Positions 8,450-47,995 of a stretch of 64,000 nucleotides of DNA are shown in pieces. A model generated the notes under the pieces. It searched no databases, was not told the DNA's origin, and was given only the letters and a program-made list of their open reading frames with translations. The DNA lies in the IMG/VR virus record IMGVR_UViG_3300044712_002668, positions 1 through 64,000 of that record, one strand, 5' to 3'. Each line of letters starts with the position of its first letter. Position 1 is the first letter of the stretch. The position numbers were made by a program, and so were the translations under genes.

Positions 8450-9976
8450 ATGAATATACAGAAATTATCTTCTCTTATACAAGGTACCGCTAAACAACTT
8501 CACAATAGCGAGAAATTACCTTTACCGCTTTTAGCAGTTAAAGCTCGTAAAGCTGCTGAAAGCCGTCCAATGGATATTCCAATTGTCAGTACCGCTCAGG
8601 TATTAACAAAAATGGCATCCAATCAAACGTTTATCAGTAGATCCGAGTTTGCTGAAGTTCTAAATAGCTTTAAAACACCAAGTTCAAAGTTGGCTGATGT
8701 ATTCGCTGAAGAACTAGGACAGAATGAACTTGATAAACCAAAGTTGTTTCAACGCGATTCAAATGAAGGTATGTCATTGGACCGTGATTATGATCGTTTG
8801 GCAGATCCTGTTTTAGCAAACGCTTTGAGCGGTGCTTTTTCAGAAACAAGAGAAGCTAAATTATATTCAAATGCAGAAGCTGAGAAGGCGCATAAATCCT
8901 GTTATGCACAGTTGCTAAGTGTTGGTTTGCCATCTCGTAGCATTACAACGTTTGCTGGTAGAAATGATATAATCATATGCCAAGCTTCCTATGAGAGTCC
9001 AAAGGGACAAGCTCATGTTTTGGTGCCAGTTGAAATCAAAGAAGGAAAAGCACTTCTACCATCAATGTTTTTGACAAGATTTGGATTCCGTGAGATCACC
9101 AAGGAAAATGTAGCGGCGCATGTTTTTGATGTTGCTGGAAAATCTTTCAAGGTAGATGGCGAGAATTTATTGAATGTTATAGCTGAGGCTAAACATGGAG
9201 TAAGAAAAGTTGCCAGCGATGTAGAGATGGCGGCAATCAAGCTGGCTTCTGAGAAGGGTAGAGCAGCTTTGGATCCAAGCCATGTTGTGTATGCAGAGCT
9301 TGATACTGATAAGCCTGCGGGCGTTCAGTTACCACAAATACCACTTACACAAGAAGAGGATACGTTTGCTAGTAAACTAAGTAATCCTGATGGTGTAGCA
9401 CGTTTTGTACATGGGGATAAGCTGGTTGAAGCTGCCAGACACATGCTGGTTTCTAAATTGGCAGGAATGTCATACAGGAACGTACAGGTAAAGGTAGCAG
9501 ATGTTGAGGATAAGAAGATATTCTTCAATGTGGCTATTGGCACTCATACTGGTTTGAAGGTACCTGTTGATATAAAGGGTGGAAACGCGATGCCACCAAA
9601 GGTAGTTATTGCTGATGGGCAGATTAAAGGGTTTTCTGCAACAGCAATCAATGATTTCGTTCAAAGCGGTCATGGTGGAGATAAGAGGGCTCTTGCAGCA
9701 GCATCTCCTACTTATGATATGAAACCAACAGAGCTTTTGGATGTTGTAAAACAATCAGTAGCCGAGGGTAATTATTTGAGAGCTGAGGAGGCTATAAATG
9801 TGCTTGGAGAGATTGATACTTCAGCCCAGCAGGTAGCATTGGCTCATTTTATGTCAAACATATACGAACCAGGAAAAGAACCTTCAAAACAAATCAAGGT
9901 TGCTGCATCAAAACCGGTGCAAGATCTTCCTGTTACATTTATGACTCACAAGATTTTCTTTCCTGAAGGAGAATAA
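8450..9976 (+). CDS. Putative virion (head) protein
   Basis: 508 aa; contains RKVA-S and IKVA-A motifs; no recognised family. Confidence 0.7.
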   Translation: MNIQKLSSLIQGTAKQLHNSEKLPLPLLAVKARKAAESRPMDIPIVSTAQVLTKMASNQTFISRSEFAEVLNSFKTPSSKLADVFAEELGQNELDKPKLFQRDSNEGMSLDRDYDRLADPVLANALSGAFSETREAKLYSNAEAEKAHKSCYAQLLSVGLPSRSITTFAGRNDIIICQASYESPKGQAHVLVPVEIKEGKALLPSMFLTRFGFREITKENVAAHVFDVAGKSFKVDGENLLNVIAEAKHGVRKVASDVEMAAIKLASEKGRAALDPSHVVYAELDTDKPAGVQLPQIPLTQEEDTFASKLSNPDGVARFVHGDKLVEAARHMLVSKLAGMSYRNVQVKVADVEDKKIFFNVAIGTHTGLKVPVDIKGGNAMPPKVVIADGQIKGFSATAINDFVQSGHGGDKRALAAASPTYDMKPTELLDVVKQSVAEGNYLRAEEAINVLGEIDTSAQQVALAHFMSNIYEPGKEPSKQIKVAASKPVQDLPVTFMTHKIFFPEGE

Positions 9977-10905
9977 TGGCTATTTCAATGGATTTAAGAG
10001 TTCTAGCTCGCAAGCTGGAGAAGAGCAGTGATGACTTATTGGTTAATGCGGCAGCAAAAGATCCTAATATTTTTGATAAAGTTGCCCAGGCTGTAGCCGC
10101 TGCTTCAACCTTACTTGAAGAAGTTGCAAATGATTTGGATGCCTCTCAATCTAATGAAATAAAACCAGAACAACTGGATGAAATAGCAGCATTAGCTTCT
10201 TCATTTTATGAGAGTGGAAATCCATTATTGAAAAAGCAGGCTTCTGTATTGGATGAGATATTGCTGTCTATTGCAGCTCCAAAAAACGCTATAGCTGAAT
10301 CTAAGAGAGTTAGTGAAGATGAGATTAATAAACTCAGAGCAAAGCGCAGGGGAGAGGCTGTTAAGGAGTTATATCAAGATCCAAAAGAAGCTCTTGATAA
10401 GATGAACCTTGTAAAAGAGCAAACTGATGCGGTCAAGAAGCAGGTAAAGCGTTATGCCCCATTGGAGGCTCCATTACAGACACGGTATGCACCTGATATG
10501 CCAGGTGTTATGATGACAAGAATTTCTGATCATATTTACCAAGATTTAGTTACTGGTAAGATTTATGACTTCAAGGCTGGATATACAACAGTTAAGGGAA
10601 ATAAAATTCCAGGTTCTTCTGTTGAAAATCAAACCGCTGCTCTGGGAGATCAGCGTCATGGCAATGCCATGTTTGAAACTCGTGAAAGTATTATGAATAG
10701 AATGGCTTCTGATGAAATTGACTTTATAAAACAGGCTGGTGATAAGATAAATATTGCCAAACAATTTTTGAAAGATGCCTCTGAGTTTTATCCTGAGAAG
10801 AAAGCGTTGGCAATCGAAGTGGTAGATAAATATCTATCAAATGATGATATGACACTTTCTTTGGACCTCTTGGATGGTCCAAAAAAAAAACTCATGAGGT
10901 GGTAG
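9976..10905 (+). CDS. Putative head protein/leader; 0-frame product ending just after an A10 slippery run
   Basis: 309 aa; KKQA-S, NRMA-S and IKQA-G motifs; ends ...GPKKKLMRW*. Confidence 0.75.
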   Translation: MAISMDLRVLARKLEKSSDDLLVNAAAKDPNIFDKVAQAVAAASTLLEEVANDLDASQSNEIKPEQLDEIAALASSFYESGNPLLKKQASVLDEILLSIAAPKNAIAESKRVSEDEINKLRAKRRGEAVKELYQDPKEALDKMNLVKEQTDAVKKQVKRYAPLEAPLQTRYAPDMPGVMMTRISDHIYQDLVTGKIYDFKAGYTTVKGNKIPGSSVENQTAALGDQRHGNAMFETRESIMNRMASDEIDFIKQAGDKINIAKQFLKDASEFYPEKKALAIEVVDKYLSNDDMTLSLDLLDGPKKKLMRW

Positions 10906-10951
10906 GTTTAAGCAGTTATGCTGCTTTCTTCCCTCCAACAGCACAACCTCA
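10879..10951 (+). other. Candidate -1 ribosomal frameshift / slippage site
   Basis: CCA AAA AAA AAA CTC (A10 at 10881-10890); -1 frame is open from the run into the 2096-aa ORF; downstream pairings AAGCAG/CTGCTT and TGAGGT/ACCTCA. Confidence 0.6.
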
Positions 10952-13900
10952 AATTGATGAGATACTTGATAAATACAAGGCTTTATCAATTTCATATGAG
11001 GAATGCAAAAAGCAATTAATAGAGCTTGGACGTTCTCTTAAGTTGCCAGAGGCTTTGCTGGAACATGAAGTGAAGCTTTTGATTCAAAACGATAGTCAAA
11101 ATAATTTCCCACCAGAAGCCACTAAGGCAGTTAATGATATTTTAGAGTGGTATAAGAAAGATCCAATGAATAAAGCGAAAGCTATTAGCGCTTTATATCA
11201 TTTAGCAGCCGAATATAATGTACCTAATGTTAATTATATAGTACATCGTATTATTAAAGAGTTTGAAGCTGAAAACTCTCTTGTACCACAATTGCCAGCT
11301 ATACCAGGAAGAGAGTCATTTGTTGGGGTGGAAAATGAATTTGATAGTACCATAATAGATTTATGGCAAGGTATTGAAACACCAGAAACAGCCTTTATAA
11401 TATTAGACCGTTTATTAATTCATAATCCACAATATACTAAAAATGAAAAAGCAAGAGAAAAGGTTATAAATCCGATAATTGAGTATGTTGAAGGAATGCG
11501 TGGGCACACAGCATTTACACCAGAAACAGAAAGTACTTTTTCTGAGCAAATTCCAACAGAGATAAATAGTGATTTATTGAGCCCTGAAGTTCAGGCTACC
11601 AAGAAATTCCGTGCCCACCAGATTGGTCTTGAAAGATATGACTCAGAAACACTGAAACACATTGAAAATGTGTTTGATTTATTGAGAAGCTCTACTATCT
11701 CAAAGGAAGAAGCTTTTAATAAATTGTTCTTGGTTATTAAGAAATTCTTATCTACAAAGAAGAATTATACGGAGATTCCTGGCGAATTGGATGCTTGGTC
11801 AGAACAGCATACAAGAGCTCTACTTAATGCTGAGTATAATAGGATTCAGCAACAAAAAAAGAAAGAGATGGCTGATAATAGGCTTAAAGAGTGTTCTCCA
11901 AGACATATTCTTGGAGCGCCAATTAATTTTTCAGACCCAGCAGTAGCTAATAAAGTAAGGAGATTATATCATCTGTTTACTAATGGTAAATTACCATGGA
12001 AAACATATCGTGCTGAGTTATTAAAAATTGGTATTGATGGTGATACACTTCCTGAAGAGAATGATATTCAAAATGCTGTAGAAGAGTTGATAACTCGTGT
12101 ATATAGTTTCAGTATAACATGGAGTGATTTTACCAGGAACATGATATTGCTTGGCAAAAATCGTAAAGATATACTTGAAATTGCAGAGAATCTGTTCAAG
12201 GACAATCAAATTACCGAGCATCAATTAACAGAGAGAACTTTGTTTGTTCTTTTGGCTTTGAAAGGATATGAACAAGGAGCCTGGAAAGCTTTTGAAAATT
12301 TCATGAAGGCAAAGGATCTTCCAGATGGAGATGAAAATAAACAGACAATACAACGGTTTGAGAGTAAGCTTGAAACAATGGGTCTCAACAAAAACGAGAT
12401 TGAAATGTTTATCAAGCTATCAGGTGTAACAACTTTTTATGAGTTGGTTCCAAAACTTACAGGTAATAATATCCTTGTAAGAATAGAAATTGATAGAAAA
12501 CTAACCGGTGAACCTGAATGGTCAAGGGTAATTATAAACGGTGCAAGAGAGTCTTTACCCCTAAAGAGCAAGACACTTAAAACTGGTATTTACAACATTG
12601 TTTTTGATGTTTGTGGTTATAAACAATTATCTCAAATTTTCAATCTTGATTTGCCAGAGTCTATGCCAGCGGAGTCTCCAAAGAAAGAACACTGCGTTGA
12701 TATTTGGGTTGCCAATCCATTATTTCCTGAGAAATGGTTGTTTTTCAAATCTGTACCACTTGAGGTGGATGCTAGCCAAGCAAAAATTGTACGTAGATTT
12801 GTAAAGCAAATTGAAAGTGTAACTGACACGGTTGAAGCTAGAACCAATCTATTAGTCAAATACAGTGCAATTGAGTTTTTGAAAACTCTGGATATTGCAG
12901 AGGAAGCAAAAGCTCTTGGATCTGATTATGGAAAGCTAACGCCAGAGGTATTATCTGGTATTTTAGGTTGCTTCAAACAAGCCAGGGATACAACTCATCC
13001 AGGTGATAAGCCTGGTGTTCAATGGGATTTGACCAATGAAGATCATGTAAATGACCTCATTGCTAAAGCCAATAATTTATGGAATGATCGCTTTTTGAGC
13101 GCAAATGTAGGCGAAAATCTTAATAAGATGATTTCCTTGGATACTTTCAAGGTTATATTCTCCTTGTTCAATAAAATAACGTCAACTGTAGATCCTCCAG
13201 AGGGAGATACATGGAATGTTGAAGACAAGGAACAAGCTGGTACTTTAGCGTCCAAGATAAAAGAAAGCATAGATCAAACTTATACAACTCGTAAGATTTA
13301 TAGCCTTGATAAGACTGTTATTACAAGTATTATTACAAGAATATATAATGATATAATGCATAACACAATGCCATTGGATATGGCATTGCCAGAATCTACT
13401 GAGAGTGTTGAACAGGATCTTTCAAAATTCTGGGATTTATCAAACCCTGATCATGTTGCATATCTTACAGAGAAAGCCAAGCAAAAATGGGATGATTTGA
13501 TAACACAGATAATATCAGCTCCAGCAATAAAGGATCCTGAGAATCCAGATATCAAAACAAGAAATGATTTATATCTTGAATTTATGTTATATGGTTTTCC
13601 TAAGTTGAAAGAACAGATGGAAAATGAGAAGAAAGAAGAACAAGTTGTGGTAGAACCCGCAACACCTTCTGCACCAGCAAAGGCTAGAAGATTAACAAAA
13701 GAGGAAAAAGCAGCTAAAGAAGCATCTCAAAAGAGAAATATTGATATTATCAAACAAATGACTGAAAGAAGCTTTGTTGCCAGAAGTATGTTTGGTAATT
13801 TCTCAAGAGAGCAACGTGAAAAAGAATGGAACAAAATTTGGCAAGAGATGTGTGCCGAAAGTCGTGATTGGATTCTTTTATCAGCGGTTGAGGAAAAGGG

Positions 13901-16900
13901 CACACAAATTGATGGTAAAAAGCTTGTATCAGAAGAAATACAACGCAGACTTGCTGAAAAGATGAAGCTTGGAACACTTTCTCCAGAAACGCTTGATTTA
14001 GACAAGATTTCTGAAGAAATCTTGAGCAATCCTGAGTATGATACATTATTCAATTTCATAAAGAAAAACTGGGTAAGATCATCTGGTGATTTGAATGCAA
14101 AGGGACTATCTGACGATGACCTTCAGAGAGAAACTTTGCGTTGGTTTAAGGAAAGCGGAGATGCCTTATTGTTATTGGCTGTTTTGAAATATTGGTATAT
14201 GGGTGTTCATAATGAGCGTATCAAAAAGAATGTTCAAGCCAAGAGCGCTGGAGCGCAAAAATTGGTAGCAGCTCAAGGTGTTACACTTGATAAAATGCAT
14301 TTATGGATGCAAAAAATCCAAGATTTGGCAGCCTATGCTCCAACACATTATCACGCAGTATATAAATGTATCATTGCATTGGTAGCTAAAGCTGTAAAAT
14401 TGTTGAGTATTGCAATTGATATAGCAAATCCTGAAAAAATTAAAACGGAACAATCCTTTTCTTTATCGAAAGAATTGAAGAGTGAAATGACAGTTGTTTC
14501 ACCTGATGATCCTGAGTTGTTTGCGGAAGCTGAGCGTCTTGGTGATTATGGTCATTTCTTACCAATGATGTTGAAGATAACAGATAATGGTAAGCTACCT
14601 GTAGAAATTCATGCACCTGTAGAACATATGAAAGACATTACTTCATTGGATTCTTCTGTTCAAAAAGTAATAAGAAACCCAGCGCTTGGAGGCGATTTAC
14701 GAACTGAAGAGGGTTTGAAGATCAAGGTACGTAATTTATATGAAGGTATAAATGCCATGTTGAGAATCATGGTCAATGTACAGGCTAGATTAACATCTCC
14801 AGTTCAAGACATTTCTAATCTTGTAGCTTTGAAATTGTACTCAATCCACAAGAAACTTGATGAAATGTTAAAACCAGTAGTGTTCTTGTGTGAAAATGCA
14901 TTGCGTAAACTTCTTACAAAAGAAGTGGTAATTAGAAATGTTGTTGGCAGGTCTCAAATGCAAGGAAATCAGGCGTATTATAATGCGCTTGGTTCTGCAG
15001 AATTAGGTAAAAAGACATTTGATCCAGTAGAAGGTGTAAGTAGCCGAGTATTGGGTATTGCCAACGCATACCTGAGTGATCAGCCAATTCGTTTGCAAAA
15101 ACTGGATGAAAAAATCAATCTGAGTGATGCTCAAGAGGCTGCTTTATATCCAGCTCAAGTTATGAGAATTTGGAAGAGAGATGAGTTACAACAGGATGGC
15201 TCTACCAAAACAATGGTAACTGAGGAATATATAAATGTTTATGAATACTATAATGTGTTCGATAAAATTAAAAAAGATGAAGATTTCCAGACTTTTGATA
15301 AGACCAGATCTGCAAAGATTATCAAAACAATGAAAGAACATTATTGTCAGAATCCATATCTTCGTAGAGAATTTGAAAATGGTAGAACCACTACATGGAA
15401 AGATGTATGTGATAATTATAGAAAAGATCCAGCAATGTCACCTCCAATGTTGACTTTGAAACAAATTGAGGATCTTGACGCTGGAAAGTTAGTTTATAAT
15501 GGAAAACAAGTTGGACCTTATGCGGTTTATAGAAAGCAGGTAAAACCAGATTTAACTAATCTAAGGGTTGACTTCAAAACTGATACTGACTTTTCAAGAT
15601 TGAAAGGACCTTGGTGTGTAAGCAATGATTGTCAAAATGATTTGTTTATTTGGAGCCGTTTGGTTGGTCAATGGTATTTGAAGCAAAAAGGTATTGAACC
15701 AACTTCAGAGAAAGAGCTTGATAAGGCTTATCAAGAATGCAAAAAAGTGTGGGCAAAATTGATTGTTGCTTCAAAGGGTAAAGTTCAATCAGGTAAGGAA
15801 GATAAAGAAATTACCGCTGATTTGCGTGCCGTATTTGAACAACAGAATGCTGTCAGCGCTTCTATGCATGCCTTTGGATTGGTAAGTCCATTTGATTATA
15901 ACCCTGGTAGCAGACAGGCCGTATATATAATAAACATTCCAATGGTTGATTGGGCCATAGAGCGTGAACTTGCTAAGCGTAAGGGTCTTCCTATGCCCAA
16001 GAAAGAAGAGGAAGATGAGTTGCCAAGTGGTGGTGATGAAGGTGAAGAGGATTTGCCAGAAGGTGATTGGACTGAGGAAGGAAGTGATCTTGAACATAAG
16101 TACAGGGATATAGAGCCTGGTCATTATGTAGGACAAGCAGGAGGAGAGGCTAAGTATCTTTCAAATGAAGAGATAAAGGCACGCAGGCAGGCAAGAAAGG
16201 ATTTAGAAAAGGCACAGGTTCAACTTGAGGAGGAAGATGATATTCCGGAAGAAACTGGACCAGCGGTAAGATTAACTGGTGAAAAACCAGCTTTACCAGA
16301 ACCTAAGCCTGGAACTTTTAAGGATACACAGAAGGCATTCCCATCTAAATTGAAGAGTGTTTTAACTACAGTACCATCTTCAATTTTGGGAATTGATGAA
16401 CCACCAGTACCTAAATTGCCAGAAAGAAGTTTATCACGTTTTGATAAACCTGTTGAAATTAAACAAGAAGAAGAGCCAGAAACAGCATTGGTACCATCTA
16501 GTGAAGACGAATCATTAGAGTCTTTATTGGCTGATTTACCAGAGGGTGATGGTGGAGAAGGTGGTGGAGAGAGTGGGGCTGCTAAAAAGATTCTACATCC
16601 CGTTCAACAAGTAAGACAGGTACATAGAAATTTTCTTGATGATTTCGGTAATGTTTCTGGTGCAGGTCCTATATCACCAAATGCTTTACAAGACACTAGA
16701 AAGTTTAGCGTATCTTCTTGGATTGAAATGGTAGCAAAGGAGTTTGGTAACGATCCAGATATTACTCCTGAAAAACCATTACACTCCCCTCTTACTAAAC
16801 CTTTGGCTTGGGAAAGATTAACTAATTCTGTATCTATTGGGGCAGCATCTGATGATATAAAGAAAGGTTTGACTCCAGAACAAAGTAAAGAATTTGATAT

Positions 16901-17189
16901 TATCATGGCTTTGAAAGCAGATCCTGCAAAGAAAGAAGAGTATGCTCAAAAGTATAAGCTGTACATAAGTAGATTCTTCTTGAAGAAGGGTTTTGTACCA
17001 CCTGCTGCATTGAATTATGTTGCAATTCAATTGAAGAAAATGGCTTCTGAAGTGGAAGACAATCCAGTTAGAGCCGGAATTTTGAATGAAGAAGCAAAGT
17101 ATGCCAATGAATTATTCGGTGATAAAAAGTGGTCTGAAGTTGGAGCAATGATAATTTCAAATCAAAAGTCTATTGGAACAAGGAAGTAA
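10899..17189 (+). CDS. Giant hypothetical protein, probably made as a -1 fusion to the upstream ORF
   Basis: 2096-aa ORF; GTG start has no upstream SD; helical repeats and acidic linkers. Confidence 0.8.
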   Translation: MVGLSSYAAFFPPTAQPQIDEILDKYKALSISYEECKKQLIELGRSLKLPEALLEHEVKLLIQNDSQNNFPPEATKAVNDILEWYKKDPMNKAKAISALYHLAAEYNVPNVNYIVHRIIKEFEAENSLVPQLPAIPGRESFVGVENEFDSTIIDLWQGIETPETAFIILDRLLIHNPQYTKNEKAREKVINPIIEYVEGMRGHTAFTPETESTFSEQIPTEINSDLLSPEVQATKKFRAHQIGLERYDSETLKHIENVFDLLRSSTISKEEAFNKLFLVIKKFLSTKKNYTEIPGELDAWSEQHTRALLNAEYNRIQQQKKKEMADNRLKECSPRHILGAPINFSDPAVANKVRRLYHLFTNGKLPWKTYRAELLKIGIDGDTLPEENDIQNAVEELITRVYSFSITWSDFTRNMILLGKNRKDILEIAENLFKDNQITEHQLTERTLFVLLALKGYEQGAWKAFENFMKAKDLPDGDENKQTIQRFESKLETMGLNKNEIEMFIKLSGVTTFYELVPKLTGNNILVRIEIDRKLTGEPEWSRVIINGARESLPLKSKTLKTGIYNIVFDVCGYKQLSQIFNLDLPESMPAESPKKEHCVDIWVANPLFPEKWLFFKSVPLEVDASQAKIVRRFVKQIESVTDTVEARTNLLVKYSAIEFLKTLDIAEEAKALGSDYGKLTPEVLSGILGCFKQARDTTHPGDKPGVQWDLTNEDHVNDLIAKANNLWNDRFLSANVGENLNKMISLDTFKVIFSLFNKITSTVDPPEGDTWNVEDKEQAGTLASKIKESIDQTYTTRKIYSLDKTVITSIITRIYNDIMHNTMPLDMALPESTESVEQDLSKFWDLSNPDHVAYLTEKAKQKWDDLITQIISAPAIKDPENPDIKTRNDLYLEFMLYGFPKLKEQMENEKKEEQVVVEPATPSAPAKARRLTKEEKAAKEASQKRNIDIIKQMTERSFVARSMFGNFSREQREKEWNKIWQEMCAESRDWILLSAVEEKGTQIDGKKLVSEEIQRRLAEKMKLGTLSPETLDLDKISEEILSNPEYDTLFNFIKKNWVRSSGDLNAKGLSDDDLQRETLRWFKESGDALLLLAVLKYWYMGVHNERIKKNVQAKSAGAQKLVAAQGVTLDKMHLWMQKIQDLAAYAPTHYHAVYKCIIALVAKAVKLLSIAIDIANPEKIKTEQSFSLSKELKSEMTVVSPDDPELFAEAERLGDYGHFLPMMLKITDNGKLPVEIHAPVEHMKDITSLDSSVQKVIRNPALGGDLRTEEGLKIKVRNLYEGINAMLRIMVNVQARLTSPVQDISNLVALKLYSIHKKLDEMLKPVVFLCENALRKLLTKEVVIRNVVGRSQMQGNQAYYNALGSAELGKKTFDPVEGVSSRVLGIANAYLSDQPIRLQKLDEKINLSDAQEAALYPAQVMRIWKRDELQQDGSTKTMVTEEYINVYEYYNVFDKIKKDEDFQTFDKTRSAKIIKTMKEHYCQNPYLRREFENGRTTTWKDVCDNYRKDPAMSPPMLTLKQIEDLDAGKLVYNGKQVGPYAVYRKQVKPDLTNLRVDFKTDTDFSRLKGPWCVSNDCQNDLFIWSRLVGQWYLKQKGIEPTSEKELDKAYQECKKVWAKLIVASKGKVQSGKEDKEITADLRAVFEQQNAVSASMHAFGLVSPFDYNPGSRQAVYIINIPMVDWAIERELAKRKGLPMPKKEEEDELPSGGDEGEEDLPEGDWTEEGSDLEHKYRDIEPGHYVGQAGGEAKYLSNEEIKARRQARKDLEKAQVQLEEEDDIPEETGPAVRLTGEKPALPEPKPGTFKDTQKAFPSKLKSVLTTVPSSILGIDEPPVPKLPERSLSRFDKPVEIKQEEEPETALVPSSEDESLESLLADLPEGDGGEGGGESGAAKKILHPVQQVRQVHRNFLDDFGNVSGAGPISPNALQDTRKFSVSSWIEMVAKEFGNDPDITPEKPLHSPLTKPLAWERLTNSVSIGAASDDIKKGLTPEQSKEFDIIMALKADPAKKEEYAQKYKLYISRFFLKKGFVPPAALNYVAIQLKKMASEVEDNPVRAGILNEEAKYANELFGDKKWSEVGAMIISNQKSIGTRK

Positions 17190-17954
17190 ATGGCAGATTT
17201 CAAGAAAATTGTTGATCATCCAGAAAAACAAACGATTATAACAAAGCTGGTAAGCGGAGACAGCCCCAAAGCTGTCTCCAAATACCTCAAAGATAAATAT
17301 GAACAACCAGATGAGGCGCATTTAAGACTTTCAGCTACACTTTTACAAGAATTTATTGATACATATGCAGATCATCACGGCTATATAAAAAAAATTATAT
17401 CAGATGATCTATCTACCAAACTTGATAAAAAAATAGCAGAATCTCTCTTGAATAACAAGGAGTGGAGAAAGCGTCTTGAAGAGACAGCAGAAGAACATAT
17501 TGATTTTAAAAAGAAGCTAGCCCATTTATTGACTATTCTTGAAGCTCGTGCAGAGCAGTTGTTTGATTTGATTCAGTCAAACCCTGAAGGAATAAAAACA
17601 GATTATATATTTACCAAGTATATGGAACTGCTTATGCAGGCTATAGAAAAGGGAGATAAGATAGTCAATGAAAAAGCTGATATCAAGATTGAACATTCTT
17701 ATACAGTTCAAATGGTTGAACAACAATCCATTATATTTCAGCAAGCCATTAAACGGAGCCTGGAACGTCTTGGTCCAAAATATGCTTCCATGTTTATGGA
17801 TATTTTACAAGAGGAAATAGCAAAAATAAACCCACAAAGTATTTCACAGGCAATTCCTGTCATTAACTTAGAAAAGGATAATAAAGCAGTTGATAAGTTG
17901 CTTGACTCTGCAACAAATTTAACTGATAAATTTTTAGATGATGAGGATGAATGA
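17190..17954 (+). CDS. Hypothetical helical protein (possible small terminase-like)
   Basis: 254 aa; N-terminal HTH-like block followed by coiled coil; function call weak. Confidence 0.6.
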   Translation: MADFKKIVDHPEKQTIITKLVSGDSPKAVSKYLKDKYEQPDEAHLRLSATLLQEFIDTYADHHGYIKKIISDDLSTKLDKKIAESLLNNKEWRKRLEETAEEHIDFKKKLAHLLTILEARAEQLFDLIQSNPEGIKTDYIFTKYMELLMQAIEKGDKIVNEKADIKIEHSYTVQMVEQQSIIFQQAIKRSLERLGPKYASMFMDILQEEIAKINPQSISQAIPVINLEKDNKAVDKLLDSATNLTDKFLDDEDE

Positions 17955-22350: not shown

Positions 22351-22683
22351 ATGAGAGATATGTCTAAATTTTATCGTACAGATGAGGTATCAAGAACAAC
22401 AACTGGTTGTCCATTGTGGCTTGAGCGTTTTGCTGAACAAATGGCAGTACAAGATGCCAAGACTGCTGTAGAAGTTGCCAGAGATCGTTCTCGTACTCCT
22501 TCTGTATTTGAACAAATGAGTTCTATTGTCAGTGGAGCCGCTCCAAGAGCAGGATCAGTAGAAGATGTTGTAAAGGAATATCAAAAACGTACCGGTCTTG
22601 ATTCTTACATTAAATCTTCAAGCTTACAAAGCGCTGCCCAGTCAATTATTGCAAACGCTGAGGCTGAAGAAAAAAAAGTATAA
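22351..22683 (+). CDS. Hypothetical protein; 0-frame product of frameshift cassette
   Basis: AGGTG RBS; ends GAA AAA AAA GTA TAA. Confidence 0.75.
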   Translation: MRDMSKFYRTDEVSRTTTGCPLWLERFAEQMAVQDAKTAVEVARDRSRTPSVFEQMSSIVSGAAPRAGSVEDVVKEYQKRTGLDSYIKSSSLQSAAQSIIANAEAEEKKV

Positions 22684-22716
22684 TGACCAATAACGAGAAA
22701 CCTACGTTATTGGTCA
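22671..22716 (+). other. Programmed -1 ribosomal frameshift signal
   Basis: Heptamer A AAA AAA (22671-22677), 6-nt spacer GTATAA, perfect 12-bp hairpin TGACCAATAACG/CGTTATTGGTCA; -1 frame open into the next ORF. Confidence 0.75.
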
Positions 22717-23018
22717 ACCATCCTGAAATAGAGAGTTTTATAAATAATTTGATTGATACTAATCATGGTATTCAAATACCAGCTATATTACATTCTATTC
22801 GTGAAATGTTTTCGCGAGATGGTGTAACTCAACAATATCTTGATGATGTTGAATTAAAAACATATATAAGTAATATTTTGATGCAAAAAAATCCAATTGA
22901 TATTGGAGTTTCCAACAATATCGGACGTGGAGTTGGAACAGTAATCGAGAATACACACGGACAAGATCAGAACAAAGAATGGTCTACTAATCTTCAGCCT
23001 GTAAAATCTGCTACTTAA
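22683..23018 (+). CDS. Hypothetical protein; -1 frame extension of 22351 ORF
   Basis: 111 aa; no clear SD; start codon lies at the base of the hairpin. Confidence 0.7.
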   Translation: MTNNEKPTLLVNHPEIESFINNLIDTNHGIQIPAILHSIREMFSRDGVTQQYLDDVELKTYISNILMQKNPIDIGVSNNIGRGVGTVIENTHGQDQNKEWSTNLQPVKSAT

Positions 23019-32264: not shown

Positions 32265-32423
32265 ATGTTAATAAAAACAGGTGATGCACAGATAATTGGT
32301 GTTGTGAAAGAAGCCAATAATGATGCGTTGGAAGACAAAGAAAGGGAAAAGATTTTAAAGCAAGCCCTGGAACAGGCTAAAAATTCACCAAGACCAATTA
32401 AAAAAACGAGTTCGGAGATCTAA
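32265..32423 (+). CDS. 52-aa ORF missed by the ORF track; N-terminus duplicates that of the protease gene
   Basis: GGAG RBS; MLIKTGDAQII...; TAATG-coupled to 32423. Confidence 0.65.
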   Translation: MLIKTGDAQIIGVVKEANNDALEDKEREKILKQALEQAKNSPRPIKKTSSEI

Positions 32424-35400
32424 TGTTAATAAAACTGGGAGAATCACAAATTCGTTCTGGAGATATACAATCTATTGAAAAAATATCAAATGATATAGAT
32501 TTGGATATTGAAAACAGAATGACTAAGTTTGCAAAACAATTAAAAGTTATAGCACCTCAGGCCAAAGATTTCTTATATTTTACCTGTGTTATGATGCACG
32601 CTGCCGAGGCTTCATTATTAAATGATGACGGTTCCTTGAAGAAGCATGCAGATGGAAGTCCGGTAAGAGCACAATGGGAAAAGGTTGGGGATCATGGAAT
32701 AAAATGGATATGTTCTGATAGGAATGTAAAACCATATAAAAATAATAATAATGATATTTTCCCTGAGAAGGAACTAAAGGTAGCTTACAAGAAATGGGTT
32801 GGACGTCCATTATGCCTCGATCATCAATCACAATCAGTTGATAAGATTCGAGGCGTTATTGTAGATACAGTTTGGGATGAGAAAAGAAAAAGAGTTATTG
32901 CACTATGTGCTTTGGATAAAAAGAATTATCCAGATCTTGCGCATAAAGTTGCATCAGGAGTAGCAACCAATGTTTCAATGGGTACTGCCGTAGGTCGTGC
33001 AGTATGTACTGAAGATGGTTGTCATCGTGTAGCGAAGACAGAACGTGATTTTTGTCAGCACATGAGAAATAAAAGCTGTTATGGTGAGATTAATCTTGAT
33101 TTATCTCCTATAGAGCTTTCATTAGTTGTTAGCGGTGCAGATCCAAAAGCCAAGGTAAAACATATTATTGCCAAGGATTTGGGGAAAGCAGCCGAAACAC
33201 TCACTGATTACCTTGGAATGAAAGAAGGTGATGGTGATATTACGAAAGACGATTTAAAGGAAGTTCAGAAAGATCTTGAACAATTGACCAAAAAAATCAG
33301 TAAGTTGACTGGCGAATTGGACGAGATAACGGAAGAAACCGATATACACGATGCGAGCGCTTATCCAGCTACTCGCTCAACATATGAGGTATCTGATGTT
33401 GAGACATCGGGAGTTAATTTAAGAGCGCCGGAGCAAATTCCATTATATGCTTCGGACTTACAAAAGGCAATAATGGGAGCGCAAGAAAAGATTGCGCAGC
33501 TTCAGGAGAATTATAACAGACTTTCTTCTTTGTTAAAGAGCGAGGAATCAATGACTAGAAAAAATGCATATTTTCAAGGAACAGTTGAGCCAAAACCAGG
33601 CGAGACAATGTATACACCAGATCCCTTGGCAGACAAGGCAAGGCTCATGGATAAGCATCTTCATGGTCCTGGCGATTTCCCAGACGTAGGTAATGTCGAG
33701 GGAATGTATCCAGGTATTACTCAGGATGACGAGGAGCTTAAAAAGAAGCTCCAACGTTTGGCAGAGGAGGAAGAGCGCGCGTTATTCCGTGAGGCTGCGC
33801 TAAAGAAAGCCAAGGAAAACCTGCTAAAGCGTCAAGCTGAATTAAAGAGCGAAGCTTATTGGCAGGGCACCACTGAGCCAAAACCTGGCCAGACCACATA
33901 TAAGCCAGATCCATTGAACAATGAAGCTCGTGAAGATGACAAACATCTTCAGGGTCAGAAACCATTCCCAGATGTGGGTAATGTTGATGGATTGTATGGC
34001 GATGACATGAAGACCAAAGAGAAACTTTCTCGTGCTTCATTGAATGCTAAATTCCGTAAGGCAGCCGGTTCTGATGGTCGTTTGGATAAGGCCGCATCTC
34101 GTTGGGAGGTCTATGCCAATGATACCCTTATTTTGACAGCTTCCGTTGATCAAATTACCAAGGGTAATGCTGACGTATTGTTTGAATCCGTTGCTACAAA
34201 GAGATTTGGAAAGAGTCTTTTGGACAGGATTCAATCAGAAGGTTTCGAGGCTACTCGTGCAGCTCTTCTAAAGACTGCCGGCGCCCCTCCAGCACCTCCA
34301 GCAATGCCTGAAATGCCTCCAGCAGCTCCTCCAGCAGGCGCTCCTCCAGCCCCTCCAGTTGGTGCTGAAGAGCCTCCACAGGCTCCAGAAAAGGGTGGGG
34401 ATCGTGTAAAGGAGATTATAAACGATCTTCGTGATCTTCTTGATGAGATTGATAATAAGATCAGCGATCTTGAAGAGCATTGTCTTGGACCAGTTGAAGA
34501 GGACGCCACTCATGTAGAGAATGTGGAACCAGCTCCAGAGCATGATTTCGCAGGTGAGGCTCCAAAGACAGCGTCTCAGTTACAGAGAATGCGTAAGACT
34601 GTAAATGGTATGTTGCGTGATGGAATCCATGAGATGATGTCAGATCTCAGTGCTCATGCAAAGGAAATCAAGACAGCAAGTGAGTTATATAAGCGCAGCT
34701 ATGATACAATGACTCCAGAGCAGCGCAAGTATTTGAATGCATTGGCAGCAGACGCCGTTACTGATGCAAAGTCTGCATTAAGAGAGTCTGTTCGTTTGAT
34801 GGGCGCAGTAGTAAAGTATGCTCATGGAACAGCAGAATTGGAGAAACGCGCTATGAAATCAGAAAAAGAAGAAGAGGATTGTAATGCAGCTGAGGATCCA
34901 ATGGGCGATCCAATGGGTGAGCTAACTGAGCTGACTCCAGAGACTTTGGGTGAGATTGGTGGTGAGGAAGAGATTCCTGGCCCAGAAGAGACAGAAGAAG
35001 CTGGTGTACCAACAGATGTAACAGAGAGTATTGAACAGGCTTTGGAGGAAGAGGCTGGTGATTTGCCAGAAGAGGAAGAGGAAGAGCTTGAGGAAGAGGA
35101 TGTTGGTAATGCTCCAGGTGATATTGTAAATCAGAATGGAAAAACAACAGTTGAATTGAATCCTCAAAATATGAAATTCCCAGGACCTGTACAAGCTTCT
35201 CTTAACACCAAGGAATCACGCGCACAAGCTCGTATGAAATTGGCAGAGAAGGCAGTTGAACTCGGTTTCAACGATCTTTCTGGCAAGGCCCATCCAAAGG
35301 GCAGCGTAGACGCTCCAAATGTTGAGACAAAGCCAAGTGTTGATGCCAAGTTCCATGTTCCACAAGATCTCAAGTCTTTGATGTTGGATCTTGCAAACCT

Positions 35401-35938
35401 TCCTCCAAAGGTTCGCAAGCAGGCTGAAGAGATTCACAATCTTGTAACCGCAGGACAGCTCGATCCAACAGACGTTGATGGATTGGTTGCTCATGGGGTA
35501 GATCCAGCGGCTGTAAAGTACTGGAAGGAAATGTGGGGTGCTGCTGGAGACTCTGAGTCAAAGGAATTTGCTACCAAGATGGTTGCAGAGCATCAGGCAT
35601 TCAAGGCAGCCGAGGACATGACATCTCATAAGGCTCGTATCAAGCAGGCTTATGAGTTAGCTTATGACATGGAAAGAAAGGGTATGATTGATCATGGACA
35701 GATTGATGATCAGGTCAATGAGATCATGAACTGGAATGAGGCTGGTTTCAACAGCGTCAAGAACATGATTGGACGTAAGCCTGTCGTAAAGCAAGCTTCT
35801 ATTCCAAATGTTGGCTTGTTACACTCCGGAGATGTAATACTTCCATCTGCACAGTTTGCAGGTGTTGAGTCCGTATCTTCTAATGGATCCGAAATCAAGA
35901 ACTACTTCGAGAGTTATTTTGCAAACAAGAGACTGTAA
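32423..35938 (+). CDS. Prohead (maturation) protease fused to scaffold-like region
   Basis: N-terminal domain with LCLDH, NVSMG and IELSLVVSGADPKA typical of phage prohead serine proteases; then coiled-coil, repeat, Pro-rich and acidic segments; lies between portal and capsid genes. Confidence 0.75.
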   Translation: MLIKLGESQIRSGDIQSIEKISNDIDLDIENRMTKFAKQLKVIAPQAKDFLYFTCVMMHAAEASLLNDDGSLKKHADGSPVRAQWEKVGDHGIKWICSDRNVKPYKNNNNDIFPEKELKVAYKKWVGRPLCLDHQSQSVDKIRGVIVDTVWDEKRKRVIALCALDKKNYPDLAHKVASGVATNVSMGTAVGRAVCTEDGCHRVAKTERDFCQHMRNKSCYGEINLDLSPIELSLVVSGADPKAKVKHIIAKDLGKAAETLTDYLGMKEGDGDITKDDLKEVQKDLEQLTKKISKLTGELDEITEETDIHDASAYPATRSTYEVSDVETSGVNLRAPEQIPLYASDLQKAIMGAQEKIAQLQENYNRLSSLLKSEESMTRKNAYFQGTVEPKPGETMYTPDPLADKARLMDKHLHGPGDFPDVGNVEGMYPGITQDDEELKKKLQRLAEEEERALFREAALKKAKENLLKRQAELKSEAYWQGTTEPKPGQTTYKPDPLNNEAREDDKHLQGQKPFPDVGNVDGLYGDDMKTKEKLSRASLNAKFRKAAGSDGRLDKAASRWEVYANDTLILTASVDQITKGNADVLFESVATKRFGKSLLDRIQSEGFEATRAALLKTAGAPPAPPAMPEMPPAAPPAGAPPAPPVGAEEPPQAPEKGGDRVKEIINDLRDLLDEIDNKISDLEEHCLGPVEEDATHVENVEPAPEHDFAGEAPKTASQLQRMRKTVNGMLRDGIHEMMSDLSAHAKEIKTASELYKRSYDTMTPEQRKYLNALAADAVTDAKSALRESVRLMGAVVKYAHGTAELEKRAMKSEKEEEDCNAAEDPMGDPMGELTELTPETLGEIGGEEEIPGPEETEEAGVPTDVTESIEQALEEEAGDLPEEEEEELEEEDVGNAPGDIVNQNGKTTVELNPQNMKFPGPVQASLNTKESRAQARMKLAEKAVELGFNDLSGKAHPKGSVDAPNVETKPSVDAKFHVPQDLKSLMLDLANLPPKVRKQAEEIHNLVTAGQLDPTDVDGLVAHGVDPAAVKYWKEMWGAAGDSESKEFATKMVAEHQAFKAAEDMTSHKARIKQAYELAYDMERKGMIDHGQIDDQVNEIMNWNEAGFNSVKNMIGRKPVVKQASIPNVGLLHSGDVILPSAQFAGVESVSSNGSEIKNYFESYFANKRL
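33557..34003 (+). repeat. Two copies of a ~53-aa unit in the scaffold region
   Basis: RKNAYFQGTVEPKPGETMYTPDPL...DKHLHG..FPDVGNVEGMY vs KSEAYWQGTTEPKPGQTTYKPDPL...DKHLQG..FPDVGNVDGLY. Confidence 0.9.
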
Positions 35939-35953
35939 TTAAAACAGCAAATG

Positions 35954-35983
35954 AGGGGCAGGTGTTTGCCTGCCCCTTGTTTT
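35954..35983 (+). terminator. Intrinsic terminator after protease/scaffold
   Basis: AGGGGCAGG/CCTGCCCCT stem followed by TGTTTT. Confidence 0.75.
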
Positions 35984-36001
35984 AAATCTTTAGAGGTATA
36001 T

Positions 36002-45346: not shown

Positions 45347-46021
45347 ATGAAACAAAATCAAGTAAAACTTTCTTCTATAAAGGATTTGCTAATAACAAAT
45401 CCTTTGCTTGATTTAAAAAAATCACAAGAGAAGATAAAAGCTAATGAGGCTAAACCTGCCAATCCAACTATAAAACAATGGAAAGAGTATTTAAAATCAG
45501 ATGGAAAATATACTGGTGATGTAAATTCTCCCGATATTGATAATGACTTTAAAACAGCAATGATAAATGCAGAAAGTGCATTATCAAATGATGTCCCTTC
45601 AATAAAGGGATTGATTTGGACAGGAAATAGTATCAATCCTGCAATTTCTATTACAGATTATCAACAGGCATTAAAGCTTTTAATCGAGAAAAAGAAGCCG
45701 AATTCTGAAAAAGAAAGTACATCTCAAAAAACTTCAAGCAGAATTGAAATTCTTAAAAAAATGGCCCATGCAACAATGGATGCAATTGGCCCGATTACCG
45801 AGGCAATGCAAGATGCTCCTAATGCTACAAAGATGCAAAAAGATCCGGGAGCTGCCGCTGCAGAAACGGGAAATCCAGAAACTTCTCCAATTCAAAACGT
45901 AATGATAAATAAACTGCCTCAAAAAAAGCAAAAACAAGAAGATAAGCTGCTTCAAAATAAGCCTAATATTGACGACAGAATGCTTCAACTTGTAGATTTA
46001 ATAGAAAAAACACAACATTGA
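45347..46021 (+). CDS. Hypothetical virion protein, possible degenerate PG-binding motif
   Basis: IKQWKEYLKSDGKYTGDVNSPDIDNDFKTAM; KKMA-H. Confidence 0.6.
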   Translation: MKQNQVKLSSIKDLLITNPLLDLKKSQEKIKANEAKPANPTIKQWKEYLKSDGKYTGDVNSPDIDNDFKTAMINAESALSNDVPSIKGLIWTGNSINPAISITDYQQALKLLIEKKKPNSEKESTSQKTSSRIEILKKMAHATMDAIGPITEAMQDAPNATKMQKDPGAAAAETGNPETSPIQNVMINKLPQKKQKQEDKLLQNKPNIDDRMLQLVDLIEKTQH

Positions 46022-46116
46022 TAAAAATTCTATTACTACTTTGTTATATATTTTGAAAGACCTATAGATGCAAGACAAAACGCGTACCACGTTATTCGGT
46101 ACAAAGGATATACACT

Positions 46117-46779: not shown

Positions 46780-46799
46780 TAATTGAGATATAAAGGTTT

Positions 46800-46822
46800 G
46801 GGGAGTGTTTTTGACACTCCCC
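46800..46822 (+). promoter_or_regulatory. GC-rich stem-loop without U tail between decoration and capsid genes
   Basis: GGGGAGTGT-TTTTG-ACACTCCCC. Confidence 0.5.
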
Positions 46823-46877
46823 GATCCACTAAAGCTGCTGATGGATTTTGGTAGCTTATTTACAGGAGGTTCTTAAT

Positions 46878-47888: not shown

Positions 47889-47911
47889 TTAGTCCAGTAG
47901 AGTCGTAACAG

Positions 47912-47943
47912 GAGGCGGGATTTAGGTCCCGCCTCTTTTTTTT
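47912..47943 (+). terminator. Intrinsic terminator after capsid gene
   Basis: GAGGCGGGAT-TTAG-GTCCCGCCTC followed by T8. Confidence 0.9.
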
Positions 47944-47995
47944 GCTAAACCCCTGACGCTCTTCTTTTCGGAAGGGCATTTTTTTGTATAGAAAC

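What the first reader, a model, noticed from the sequence alone, without database searches (positions are those of the whole stretch)
10879..10951. -1 frameshift would fuse a 305-aa leader to the giant ORF, giving a ~2404-aa protein
Seen: CCA AAA AAA AAA CTC ATG AGG TGG TAG in the 0 frame; the -1 frame reads ...KKK-THEVVGLSSY... without a stop into the 2096-aa ORF, whose GTG has no upstream SD. Possible stimulators: TGAGGT (10895) with ACCTCA (10946) and AAGCAG/CTGCTT (10910-10926). The leader carries the helical module and K-x-A sites. Inference: recoding sets a low ratio of giant cargo to free leader. A homopolymer assembly error (true A11) is the main alternative; the similar site at 22671 argues for programming.
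Basis: partly seen in the sequence, partly recalled or inferred. Interest (0 to 1): 0.8.

Follow-up and report, generated by a model that had tools for sequence, protein, structure and literature searches.

The report
Conserved poly-A recoding site, huge phage
In a huge soil phage, a run of ten A's joins a conserved 300-residue protein to a 2,100-residue protein of unknown function in the next reading frame. Related phages keep the same slippery run in front of unrelated large proteins, so this looks like a deliberate way to make a short and a giant version of one protein rather than a sequencing error.

Summary
ORF 9976-10905 (309 aa) ends CCA AAA AAA AAA CTC ATG AGG TGG TAG. A10 (10881-10890) is the longest homopolymer in the window. 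The 2096-aa ORF lies in the -1 frame, which is open only from 10848.

Assembly error is unlikely. The sample was sequenced on Illumina NovaSeq and assembled with metaSPAdes, and a second assembly (Logan) gives identical gene calls.

Programmed recoding is well supported:
- This genome avoids long A-runs. Synonymous shuffles give 14.7 runs of 8 or more; 3 are observed.
- Only the junction KKK is encoded AAA-AAA-AAA.
- Closer relatives have an A9 run at the same place: L016 and L017 (two SRA runs) and L015. Each has a 0-frame stop a few codons later and a roughly 1,050-aa ORF in the -1 frame.
- In those relatives, protein conservation (53%) starts at the A-run, 47 codons before the first ATG.

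Other family members stop at about residue 243-260 or carry in-frame extensions, so the leader's C-terminus is a hypervariable attachment point.

What is conserved is an A-run of 9 or more, not a 3' structure. Transcriptional slippage is therefore at least as likely as ribosomal -1 frameshifting.

The second site (A8, 22670) looks like a textbook -1 frameshift cassette with a 12-bp hairpin 6 nt downstream. The function of the leader and of the cargo is unknown.

The parts
9976..10905 (+). Leader ORF, 309 aa. Residues 1 to about 243 are a conserved phage protein family. Residues 243-305 are a helical C-terminal extension that runs into the A-run.
   Evidence: The family was found. The end point of family members is shown. 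The AF2 model has pLDDT 82.
10860..10883 (+). RNA hairpin immediately 5' of the A-run, overlapping its first three A's (UUUGGACC-N8-GGUCCAAA). It is a possible nascent-RNA stimulator of polymerase slippage.
   Evidence: 8 nt, 100% complementary.: -12.2 kcal/mol, z = -4.0 and -3.3, with 0-1 of 200 shuffles folding as well.
10881..10890 (+). A10 slippery run: CCA AAA AAA AAA C in the 0 frame. It holds in-phase A_AAA_AAA heptamers at 10881 and 10884.
   Evidence: The homologous A9 runs are at L016 10928-10936, L017 6385-6393 and L015 10932-10940.
10903..10905 (+). 0-frame stop TAG, four codons after the A-run. It ends the short product (309 aa).
10890..17189 (+). Cargo reading frame (-1 relative to the leader). 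It is 2099 codons from ACT at 10890, or 2096 if counted from GTG 10899. It is an ORFan with no SD and no nearby ATG.
   Evidence: No homologue was found.
10891..10960 (+). Possible 3' RNA structure. An outer stem (10895-10903 / 10943-10951) encloses the hairpin 10910-10926. Support is weak and there is no counterpart in relatives.
   Evidence: z = -1.7 to -2.4. Relatives are shown.
22351..22683 (+). Second site, upstream ORF (110 aa). It corresponds to the N-terminal domain of a protein that is a single ORF in relatives.
   Evidence: 50-53% identity to L015 299-aa residues 8-110 and L018 380-aa residues 9-107, E = 2e-29.
22671..22677 (+). In-phase slippery heptamer A_AAA_AAA, within the A8 run 22670-22677.
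22684..22716 (+). Perfect 12-bp stem-loop 6 nt after the heptamer. It also buries the U and G of the ATG at 22683.
   Evidence: -17 kcal/mol, z = -7.5, 0 of 200 shuffles.
22683..23018 (+). Second site, downstream ORF (111 aa, -1 frame). It corresponds to the C-terminal domain of the same protein in relatives.
   Evidence: 48% identity to L015 residues 191-296 (E = 1e-28) and 41% to L018 residues 272-377.

Best explanation
The A10 run at 10881-10890 is a real, selected recoding site in a huge phage from rice-paddy soil (contig of 336-455 kb).

Standard decoding gives a 309-aa protein: a conserved core of about 243 aa plus a helical tail. In a fraction of expression events the frame moves by -1 within the A-run. 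This happens either because RNA polymerase adds one extra A to the transcript, or because the ribosome slips back one base on A_AAA_AAA. Translation then continues for 2099 more codons and gives a 2404-aa fusion, ...GPKKK-THEVVGLSSY....

Both products share the leader, so the leader's partners or location are imposed on a small number of giant cargo molecules, as with Gag/Gag-Pol or IS OrfA/OrfAB.

Shown:
- the anatomy of the site
- that it does not depend on the assembler
- avoidance of A-runs in this genome
- conservation of the run and of the -1 arrangement in relatives
- coding conservation that starts at the run

Inferred:
- that slippage occurs, and how efficiently
- which machine slips. 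I lean slightly towards transcriptional slippage, because what is conserved is a run of 9 or more A's, about the length of the RNA-DNA hybrid. The only well-supported structure here is a hairpin 5' of the run, and the relatives have no 3' stimulator.
- what the leader and the cargo do. This is unknown. The gene sits in a conserved block just upstream of the terminase, portal and protease genes, so a virion or assembly role is a guess.
For: 1. Real DNA sequence.
- Sample 3300044712 was sequenced on Illumina NovaSeq 2x151 and assembled with metaSPAdes (PMC10734482).
- A Logan assembly of SRR26046407 gives the same 309-aa and 2096-aa calls.
- All 29 runs of A7/T7, and the A8 at 17387, lie in unbroken frames.

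2. Selection on the run.
- Synonymous-codon shuffles of 56 ORFs give 14.7 +/- 2.8 A-runs of 8 or more, against 3 observed. They give 6.2 +/- 2.0 runs of 9 or more, against 1 observed.
- Of 15 Lys stretches of 3 or more, only the junction one is AAA-AAA-AAA.

3. Conservation in relatives.
- L016 and L017 (two SRA runs): leader of 318 aa ending ...EESEKKKVRSTVK*, an A9 run, and a 1031-aa ORF in the -1 frame. That frame is open from just before the run, and the first ATG is 141 nt after it.
- L015: an A9 run, with the -1 frame opening inside the run itself.
- The L015 and L016 cargos align from residue 2-3, immediately after the run. Identity is 53% over the 47 codons before the ATG and 59% overall.

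4. The leader's C-terminus is an attachment point.
- About 30 family members end at window residue 235-260.
- Others carry in-frame extensions: L018 437 aa, L021 417 aa, P0022 583 aa.
- Distant relatives end at residue 243 and have no cargo gene.

5. No independent start for the cargo.
- GTG 10899 has no spaced SD, and the first ATG is codon 90.

6. A second recoding-type cassette lies in the same genome.

7. Precedents from the literature.
- Bacterial RNA polymerase slips efficiently on runs of 9 A or T.
- A hairpin 5' of the slippage motif stimulates slippage in Roseiflexus IS630 (PMC5009743).
- Citrobacter tssM1 uses an A11 run before a stop codon to make two length variants (PMC4256274).
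Against: - There are no reads, transcripts or peptides, so slippage itself is not observed and neither is the product ratio.
- The window's cargo and its leader extension are not detectably similar to those of the relatives. The run could therefore be convergent rather than inherited.
- L015 comes from an assembly with a Flye-style contig name and has another frame break in the same gene. Its A-count is less trustworthy.
- SRR26046407 may be the same reads as the JGI assembly. If so, the two assemblies are independent programs, not independent data.
- 17 of 56 ORF starts in the window also lack my SD motif, so 'no SD' is weak on its own.
- The 3' structure is marginal (z = -1.7 to -2.4).
Confidence: 0.78

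Rival explanations
1. Two separate genes. The giant ORF starts by itself at GTG 10899, or restarts after the leader's stop (the overlap is GTGGTAG). The A10 run is then incidental.
For: - Gene callers in two pipelines called it this way.
- Overlapping stop and start codons are common in this window.
- 17 of 56 ORF starts lack an SD-like motif.
Against: - GTG 10899 has GAG directly abutting it, with no spacing.
- An incidental A10 is unlikely in a genome that otherwise avoids runs of 8 or more.
- In L015 and L016 the homologous large ORF is conserved for 47 codons upstream of its first ATG, back to the A-run. Independent initiation cannot explain that.
- The leader carries 66 extra residues beyond the family's usual end, leading up to the run.
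Confidence: 0.07
2. Sequencing or assembly error. The true sequence is A11 and there is one 2404-aa gene.
For: - Homopolymers are the classic place for indel errors.
- A single extra A restores one ORF.
- The second frame break (22670) would also be mended by +1 A.
Against: - The data are Illumina NovaSeq assembled with metaSPAdes, and a second assembler gives the same calls.
- Every A7/T7 run and the other A8 are in frame.
- Relatives from other samples show the same -1 arrangement at A9.
- Even a true A11 would be slippage-prone and would still give two products.
Confidence: 0.05
3. A genuine frameshift at the DNA level without programming. This would be either a recent inactivating mutation of a formerly single gene, or population-level phase variation of the A-run length through replication slippage.
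For: - Long A-runs mutate quickly by replication slippage.
- A metagenome consensus hides minority alleles.
- The 6.3-kb downstream ORF is intact, which fits a recent event.
Against: - The same out-of-frame arrangement in three other phages, whose cargo proteins are only 59% identical to each other, cannot be a recent accident.
- The 0-frame stop lies only 4-7 codons after the run in every case.
Confidence: 0.06

Closest known systems
Transcriptional slippage on long A/T runs giving two length variants: Citrobacter rodentium tssM1 (A11), Thermus thermophilus dnaX (9 T), Shigella spa13/mxiE (PMC4256274; PMC5009743)
   Same: - A run of 9 or more A's lies a few codons before the 0-frame stop.
- One extra A in the mRNA joins a downstream ORF.
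- Both the short and the long product are expected.
- No strong 3' RNA structure is needed.
   Different: - The setting is a phage gene, not a bacterial secretion or replication gene.
- The appended part is very large (2099 aa) and is an ORFan.
- It is unknown whether the host's polymerase or a phage polymerase transcribes the gene.
- Slippage has not been shown here.
Roseiflexus IS630 hairpin-stimulated transcriptional slippage (PMC5009743)
   Same: A stable RNA hairpin lies immediately 5' of the slippage motif (window 10860-10883, abutting and overlapping the A-run).
   Different: - In Roseiflexus the motif is T5C5 and a base is deleted. Here an A-run would need an insertion.
- The relatives have only 4-5-bp hairpins 2 nt upstream, and these are not significant.
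Programmed -1 ribosomal frameshifting in bacteria and phages: dnaX A_AAA_AAG, IS3/IS911 OrfA-OrfAB, lambda tail chaperone G/GT, T7 gene 10A/10B
   Same: - An in-phase A_AAA_AAA heptamer near the end of ORF1, with ORF2 in the -1 frame.
- The fusion shares the N-terminal protein.
- Site 2 in this window (22671-22716) has the full cassette: heptamer, 6-nt spacer and 12-bp stem-loop.
   Different: - At site 1 the 3' structure is weak and not conserved, and the run is longer than a ribosomal shift needs.
- The genes are not tail chaperones, transposases or capsid proteins as far as can be told.
Gag/Gag-Pol logic and phage polymorphic C-terminal cargo (for example MuF-fused polymorphic toxins of prophages). 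This comparison is from my own knowledge and was not tested here.
   Same: A conserved N-terminal module carries a variable C-terminal cargo. A low-frequency recoding event would set the number of cargo copies.
   Different: - No toxin, enzyme or any known domain was found in any cargo.
- There is no evidence that the leader is a virion protein.

Membership tests
Programmed recoding site (frameshift or slippage) in general | Two long ORFs overlap in a short window that contains a shift-prone sequence in the right phase. | tested here: met
   The overlap window is 10848-10903 and contains A10 with in-phase A_AAA_AAA.
Programmed recoding site (frameshift or slippage) in general | The shift site and the frame arrangement are conserved in homologous genes of diverged relatives. 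| tested here: met
   L016/L017 and L015 have A9 at the homologous position with a -1 large ORF. Coding conservation starts at the run.
Programmed recoding site (frameshift or slippage) in general | The trans-frame product is detected (peptide, reporter or edited mRNA). | not testable with these tools
   No reads, transcriptome or proteome were available.
Canonical -1 ribosomal frameshift cassette | A stimulatory stem-loop or pseudoknot lies 5-9 nt 3' of the heptamer. | tested here: inconclusive
   Site 1: the structure starts 0-7 nt after the run, z = -1.7 to -2.4, and is absent in relatives. Site 2 meets the criterion clearly: 6-nt spacer, 12-bp perfect stem, z = -7.5.
Transcriptional slippage site | A homopolymer of about 9 or more A/T, the length of the RNA-DNA hybrid. 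| tested here: met
   A10 in the window and A9 in L015, L016 and L017. The length criterion is taken from PMC5009743.
Transcriptional slippage site | A heterogeneous mRNA population with extra A's. | not testable with these tools
   No RNA data were available.
Phage tail assembly chaperone G/GT frameshift | Two small ORFs lie between the major tail gene and the tape-measure gene, and belong to a chaperone family. | tested here: not met
   Neither site lies there. Site 1 precedes a 254-aa gene in a block upstream of TerL, and site 2 lies directly upstream of TerL. There are no Pfam or PHROG chaperone hits.
Polymorphic toxin or effector cargo | A recognisable toxin or enzymatic domain in the variable C-terminal part. 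| tested here: not met
   No family reached significance in the window's giant or in the relatives' cargos and extensions. The Atlas gave no lead.

The most novel reading that the evidence does not exclude
The leader family is an assembly or virion protein of a clade of large soil and groundwater phages, and its C-terminus serves as a docking point for hypervariable cargo. When the cargo becomes very large (1,000-2,100 aa), a poly-A slippage site is kept between leader and cargo. Only a few copies per particle then carry the giant, rapidly replaced cargo, which is delivered with the virion. That would be a Gag-Pol-like dosing device for a diversifying phage 'payload' locus, made of proteins with no relatives among the roughly 1.8 billion cluster representatives searched.
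Probability: 0.2. Interest if true: 0.75.

Novelty: new member of a known kind. Interest (0 to 1): 0.55.

Why it matters
It adds a well-supported, conserved recoding site to huge phages, a group in which such sites are hardly charted.

Gene callers split a 2404-aa protein into a 'hypothetical 309 aa' and a start-less 'hypothetical 2096 aa'. The same mis-annotation is present in at least three related phages.

The locus links recoding to a hypervariable attachment point. The conserved leader occurs with no cargo, with an in-frame extension, or with a giant frameshifted cargo. This gives a concrete handle for asking what giant ORFan proteins of huge phages do and how their dose is set.

The same genome also carries a textbook -1 cassette that splits a gene which is intact in relatives. 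That makes it a compact natural system for comparing transcriptional and ribosomal slippage on A-runs.

Tried and rejected
Searches for relatives of the giant ORF all returned only the protein itself or noise:
- word-indexed search of 5.8 billion proteins, on residues 1-500 and 1200-2096
- phmmer of the first 1200 residues against 1.84 billion representatives
- PDB sequences
- Pfam and PHROGs, on the whole protein and in eight pieces at E up to 1
- ESM Atlas, on the first 2046 of its 2096 residues and on residues 1230-1720
- tblastn against all relatives' loci
- hhalign against the relatives' cargo

Other dead ends:
- DNA search of the phage collection found nothing.
- An exact-site scan of IMG/VR allowing A8-A12 found only this contig.
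- The first scans for relatives found only distant phages without any cargo gene. Those could not decide the question. The closer relatives came from the profile search.
- A test for a repeat shared by the leader's tail and the giant was not significant.
- The AF2 model of the leader from 6 sequences was poor (pLDDT 54). With 42 sequences it was good (pLDDT 82), but Foldseek gave no informative fold match.

Hypotheses rejected:
- Stop-codon reassignment. Stop usage is TAA 36, TGA 16, TAG 4, and a TAA follows two codons after the TAG.
- A phage tRNA-Lys in the window. There are no tRNA genes.
- An internal promoter or terminator at the junction. Nothing was found above background.

Procedural points:
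- The two ORFs were never joined. All searches used the pieces separately.
Full report
**1. What is in the sequence**

ORF 9976-10905 (309 aa) ends ...CTC TTG GAT GGT CCA AAA AAA AAA CTC ATG AGG TGG TAG.
- The A-run is A10 at 10881-10890.
- The next ORF, 10899-17189 (2096 aa from a GTG), lies in the -1 frame.
- That frame carries many stops upstream and is open only from 10848. The two frames can therefore be joined only between 10848 and 10903, a 58-nt window centred on the run.
- A -1 shift, or one extra A, gives 305 + 2099 = 2404 aa with the junction ...GPKKK/THEVVGLSSY.

**2. Origin of the window**

The window is the first 64 kb of IMGVR_UViG_3300044712_002668 (336 kb). This corresponds to JGI contig Ga0453684_0000070 (455 kb).

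All genes lie on one strand and GC is about 36%. Recognisable genes include:
- RecA-, DnaJ-, primase- and sigma-like genes upstream
- a gpA-type large terminase at 23077
- a portal gene at 24954
- a protease domain in the gene at 32423

Most other proteins, including all those around the finding, match no Pfam or PHROG family. This is a huge phage of a poorly known lineage.

**3. Is A10 an artefact?**

Metagenome 3300044712 is from rice-paddy soil or rhizosphere. It was sequenced on Illumina NovaSeq (2x151) and assembled with metaSPAdes (PMC10734482). That platform has no strong homopolymer bias.

An independent Logan assembly of SRR26046407 (32-kb contig) carries the identical 309-aa protein. 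Its 2096-aa ORF differs only in how the first codon is written. It also reproduces the 110/111-aa pair at the second site.

Within the window, every A7/T7 run and the A8 at 17387 sit in unbroken frames. Of 33 runs of 7 or more, only A10 and the A8 at 22670 coincide with a switch of the open frame. I put a simple error at about 5%.

**4. Is the run selected?**

Lys is encoded AAA 61.5% of the time, yet the genome avoids long A-runs. I shuffled synonymous codons within the 56 ORFs.

| A-run length | Expected from shuffles | Observed |
|---|---|---|
| 8 or more | 14.7 +/- 2.8 | 3 |
| 9 or more | 6.2 +/- 2.0 | 1 |

None of 300 shuffles had as few runs of 8 or more as the real genome.

Of 15 Lys stretches of three or more, 14 are interrupted by AAG. 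The only AAA-AAA-AAA is the one at the junction. Of the three runs of 8 or more that survive in coding sequence, two sit where a -1 change joins two ORFs. These are also the only gene junctions with an in-phase X_XXY_YYZ heptamer.

**5. No independent start for the cargo**

- 39 of 56 ORF starts have an SD-like tetramer 3-12 nt upstream, against 15% of random positions.
- GTG 10899 has only GAG touching it.
- The first in-frame ATG is codon 90.

On its own this is weak evidence, because 17 ORF starts lack the motif.

**6. Comparative evidence, which decides the case**

Distant relatives came first: three IMG/VR phages of 13-142 kb, a groundwater contig and a 229-kb contig. They keep the gene order 160 aa, 508 aa, leader, 254 aa, 657 aa. 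Their leader homologue ends exactly at window residue 243 (...LSRRK*), and no large gene follows. The window's leader has 66 extra residues running into the A-run.

A profile search then found 42 further family members at 35-67% identity. Most are 235-264 aa and end at residue 240-255. The loci fall into three states.

| State of the leader locus | Examples |
|---|---|
| No cargo | L020 (261 aa), followed directly by the 252-aa gene |
| In-frame extension | L018 (437 aa), L021 (417 aa), P0022 (583 aa) |
| A-run plus -1 large ORF | window; L016/L017; L015 |

Details of the third state:
- **L016 and L017** (Logan assemblies of two runs, SRR29366203 and SRR29366202). The leader is 318 aa and ends ...EESEKKKVRSTVK*. 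The KKK is an A9 run. The stop follows six codons later. A 1031-aa ORF lies in the -1 frame, which is open from just before the run, and its first ATG is 141 nt downstream.
- **L015** (ENA). It has an A9 run...NESDKKKEFRSRVT*, and a 1008-aa ORF in the -1 frame. That frame opens inside the A-run itself, so the join can occur nowhere else.

The L015 and L016 cargos are 59% identical, and their alignment starts at residue 2-3 after the run. The 47 codons upstream of the first ATG are 53% identical. That stretch is therefore translated in the -1 frame, which only a frame change at the A-run can achieve.

P0019 (317 aa) also carries a Lys run near its end (...DSKKKKRTAKE). Its contig stops 3 nt after the ORF's called end, and no DNA could be fetched.

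The same device therefore exists in at least three diverged phages, in front of cargos with no detectable similarity to each other's class. The window's giant against the L015/L016 cargo gives BLASTP E of about 1 and hhalign E of 0.5.

In L016 a copy of the leader's extension module recurs inside the cargo (E = 6e-5 to the P0019 extension). That fits one polypeptide design.

**7. Which machine slips?**

Both routes give the same protein.

*For ribosomal -1 shifting:* A_AAA_AAA is in phase, and a structure can form 3' of the run. That structure is marginal:
- -20.9 kcal/mol, z = -2.4, for 10879-10965
- z = -1.7 for 10891-10960
- the relatives have nothing comparable (z = +1.0 and -0.3)

*For transcriptional slippage:*
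- The conserved feature is a run of 9-10 A's. Bacterial RNA polymerase slips efficiently at that length (PMC5009743).
- The best-supported structure in the window is a hairpin immediately 5' of the run, overlapping its first three A's: 10860-10883, 8 bp, -12.2 kcal/mol, z = -4.0 and -3.3. The position recalls the nascent-RNA hairpin that drives slippage in Roseiflexus IS630.
- L015 and L016 have only 4-5-bp hairpins ending 2 nt before the run, and these are not significant.
- The closest described analogue is Citrobacter tssM1. There an A11 run before a stop yields two length variants by transcriptional slippage, and both variants are needed (PMC4256274).

I lean slightly towards transcription, roughly 50:40, with the remainder for both contributing.

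**8. The second site**

At 22670-22677 the 0 frame reads GAA GAA AAA AAA GTA TAA. The layout is:
- an in-phase A_AAA_AAA heptamer at 22671-22677
- a 6-nt spacer
- a perfect 12-bp stem-loop at 22684-22716 (-17 kcal/mol, z = -7.5)
- the U and G of the ATG at 22683 buried in that stem, and no SD in front of it

The 110-aa and 111-aa ORFs match the N- and C-terminal domains of a single protein in closer relatives: 299 aa in L015 and 380 aa in L018 (E = 2e-29 and 1e-28). In those relatives an acidic linker joins the two domains. In the distant relatives the evidence for a match to a single protein is weak.

This is a canonical -1 frameshift cassette. A gene fission with coupled re-initiation (TAATG) is the alternative. 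I put frameshifting at about 65-70%. The other A8, at 17387, has no structure and no frame switch.

**9. What the proteins are**

*Leader.* With a 42-sequence alignment, AF2 gives pLDDT 82. The model shows:
- long helical hairpins (residues 2-156)
- a small beta motif around the invariant QTRY.PD.PG...R..D..YQ...T.K.YDF..G (residues 169-204)
- a flexible stretch
- a helical hairpin formed by the extension (residues 236-288)

Foldseek finds nothing informative in the PDB (E above 1). In BFVD it finds only a 237-aa family member.

*Giant.* It is an ORFan in every search (see the tried-and-rejected list). By eye it looks mostly helical, with a beta-rich stretch near residues 520-640 and acidic, Pro-rich linkers near 1690-1900. 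No toxin or enzyme signature was seen.

*Role.* The gene block lies just upstream of the terminase, portal and protease genes. The leader tolerates any C-terminal appendage. These two points suggest a Gag/Gag-Pol-like way of bringing a few copies of a large, fast-changing cargo to wherever the leader goes. This is inference only.

**10. Verdict**

| Explanation | Probability |
|---|---|
| Programmed recoding at the A10 run, making a 309-aa and a 2404-aa product | about 0.78 |
| Separate genes | 0.07 |
| Sequencing or assembly error | 0.05 |
| Unprogrammed DNA-level frameshift or phase variation | 0.06 |

The kind of mechanism is known. The gene family, the size and variability of the cargo, and the setting in a huge phage are new. 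Read counts, RNA and peptide data are the missing proof.

Noticed in passing
window 22351-23018 (A8 at 22670-22677; hairpin 22684-22716): A second recoding-type site. An in-phase A_AAA_AAA is followed by a 6-nt spacer and a perfect 12-bp stem-loop (z = -7.5). It lies between two ORFs (110 and 111 aa) that are the N- and C-terminal domains of one 299-380-aa protein in relatives, where an acidic linker joins them.
   Followed up: yes
window, all 56 ORFs: The genome strongly avoids long A-runs in coding sequence. Three runs of 8 or more are observed, against 14.7 expected from synonymous shuffles. Lys triplets are nearly always interrupted by AAG.
   Followed up: yes
window 17387-17394: A third A8 run lies in phase (A_AAA_AAA) inside the 254-aa gene. 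It has no nearby structure and no frame switch. A slip there would end after a few codons. A distant relative (L003 10467-10474) has an A8 about 10 codons away in the homologous gene.
   Followed up: partly
L018 10001-11314; L021 8001-9254; L019 174-1925; L020 8001-8786: The leader family's C-terminus is hypervariable. Some members have no extension (261 aa). Others have unrelated in-frame extensions (417, 437 and 583 aa). This locus is where the large frameshifted cargos sit in the window, L015 and L016.
   Followed up: partly
L016 10936-14169 (cargo residues 114-170): The cargo contains a copy of the helical module that forms the leader's C-terminal extension (31.6% identity over 57 aa to the P0019 extension, E = 6e-5).
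   Followed up: no
L015 10001-10964: In this relative the leader gene has an additional frame break (264 aa plus an overlapping 73 aa) upstream of the A9 run. The contig name looks like a long-read (Flye-style) assembly, so this break may be an error.
   Followed up: no
L003 15900-18812; L020 15067-end; L018 1-70: The large terminase is 970-979 aa in two relatives, against about 620 aa elsewhere, and has a LAGLIDADG hit in L020. A DNA polymerase III alpha gene with a LAGLIDADG hit lies in L018. These are probably inteins or homing endonucleases.
   Followed up: no
L002 10286-10293 (same site as L008 12544-12551): In one distant relative, a GC-rich stretch followed by a T8 run lies about 55 nt after the leader gene's stop. 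It looks like an intrinsic terminator. The window has no such signal after the leader or after the giant ORF.
   Followed up: no
window 32423-35938: A 1171-aa protein whose residues 107-217 match head-maturation protease families. The rest has no match. It may be a protease fused to a large scaffold-like or internal protein.
   Followed up: no
window 34001-36000, 46001-48000, 54001-58000: Islands of higher GC (0.43-0.47 against about 0.36). The last two also show lower GC skew and slightly negative AT skew. No tRNA genes occur anywhere in the window.
   Followed up: no
whole contig: The IMG/VR record is 335,988 bp, but the JGI contig with the same start is 454,833 bp. The reason for the trimming is unknown.
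   Followed up: no
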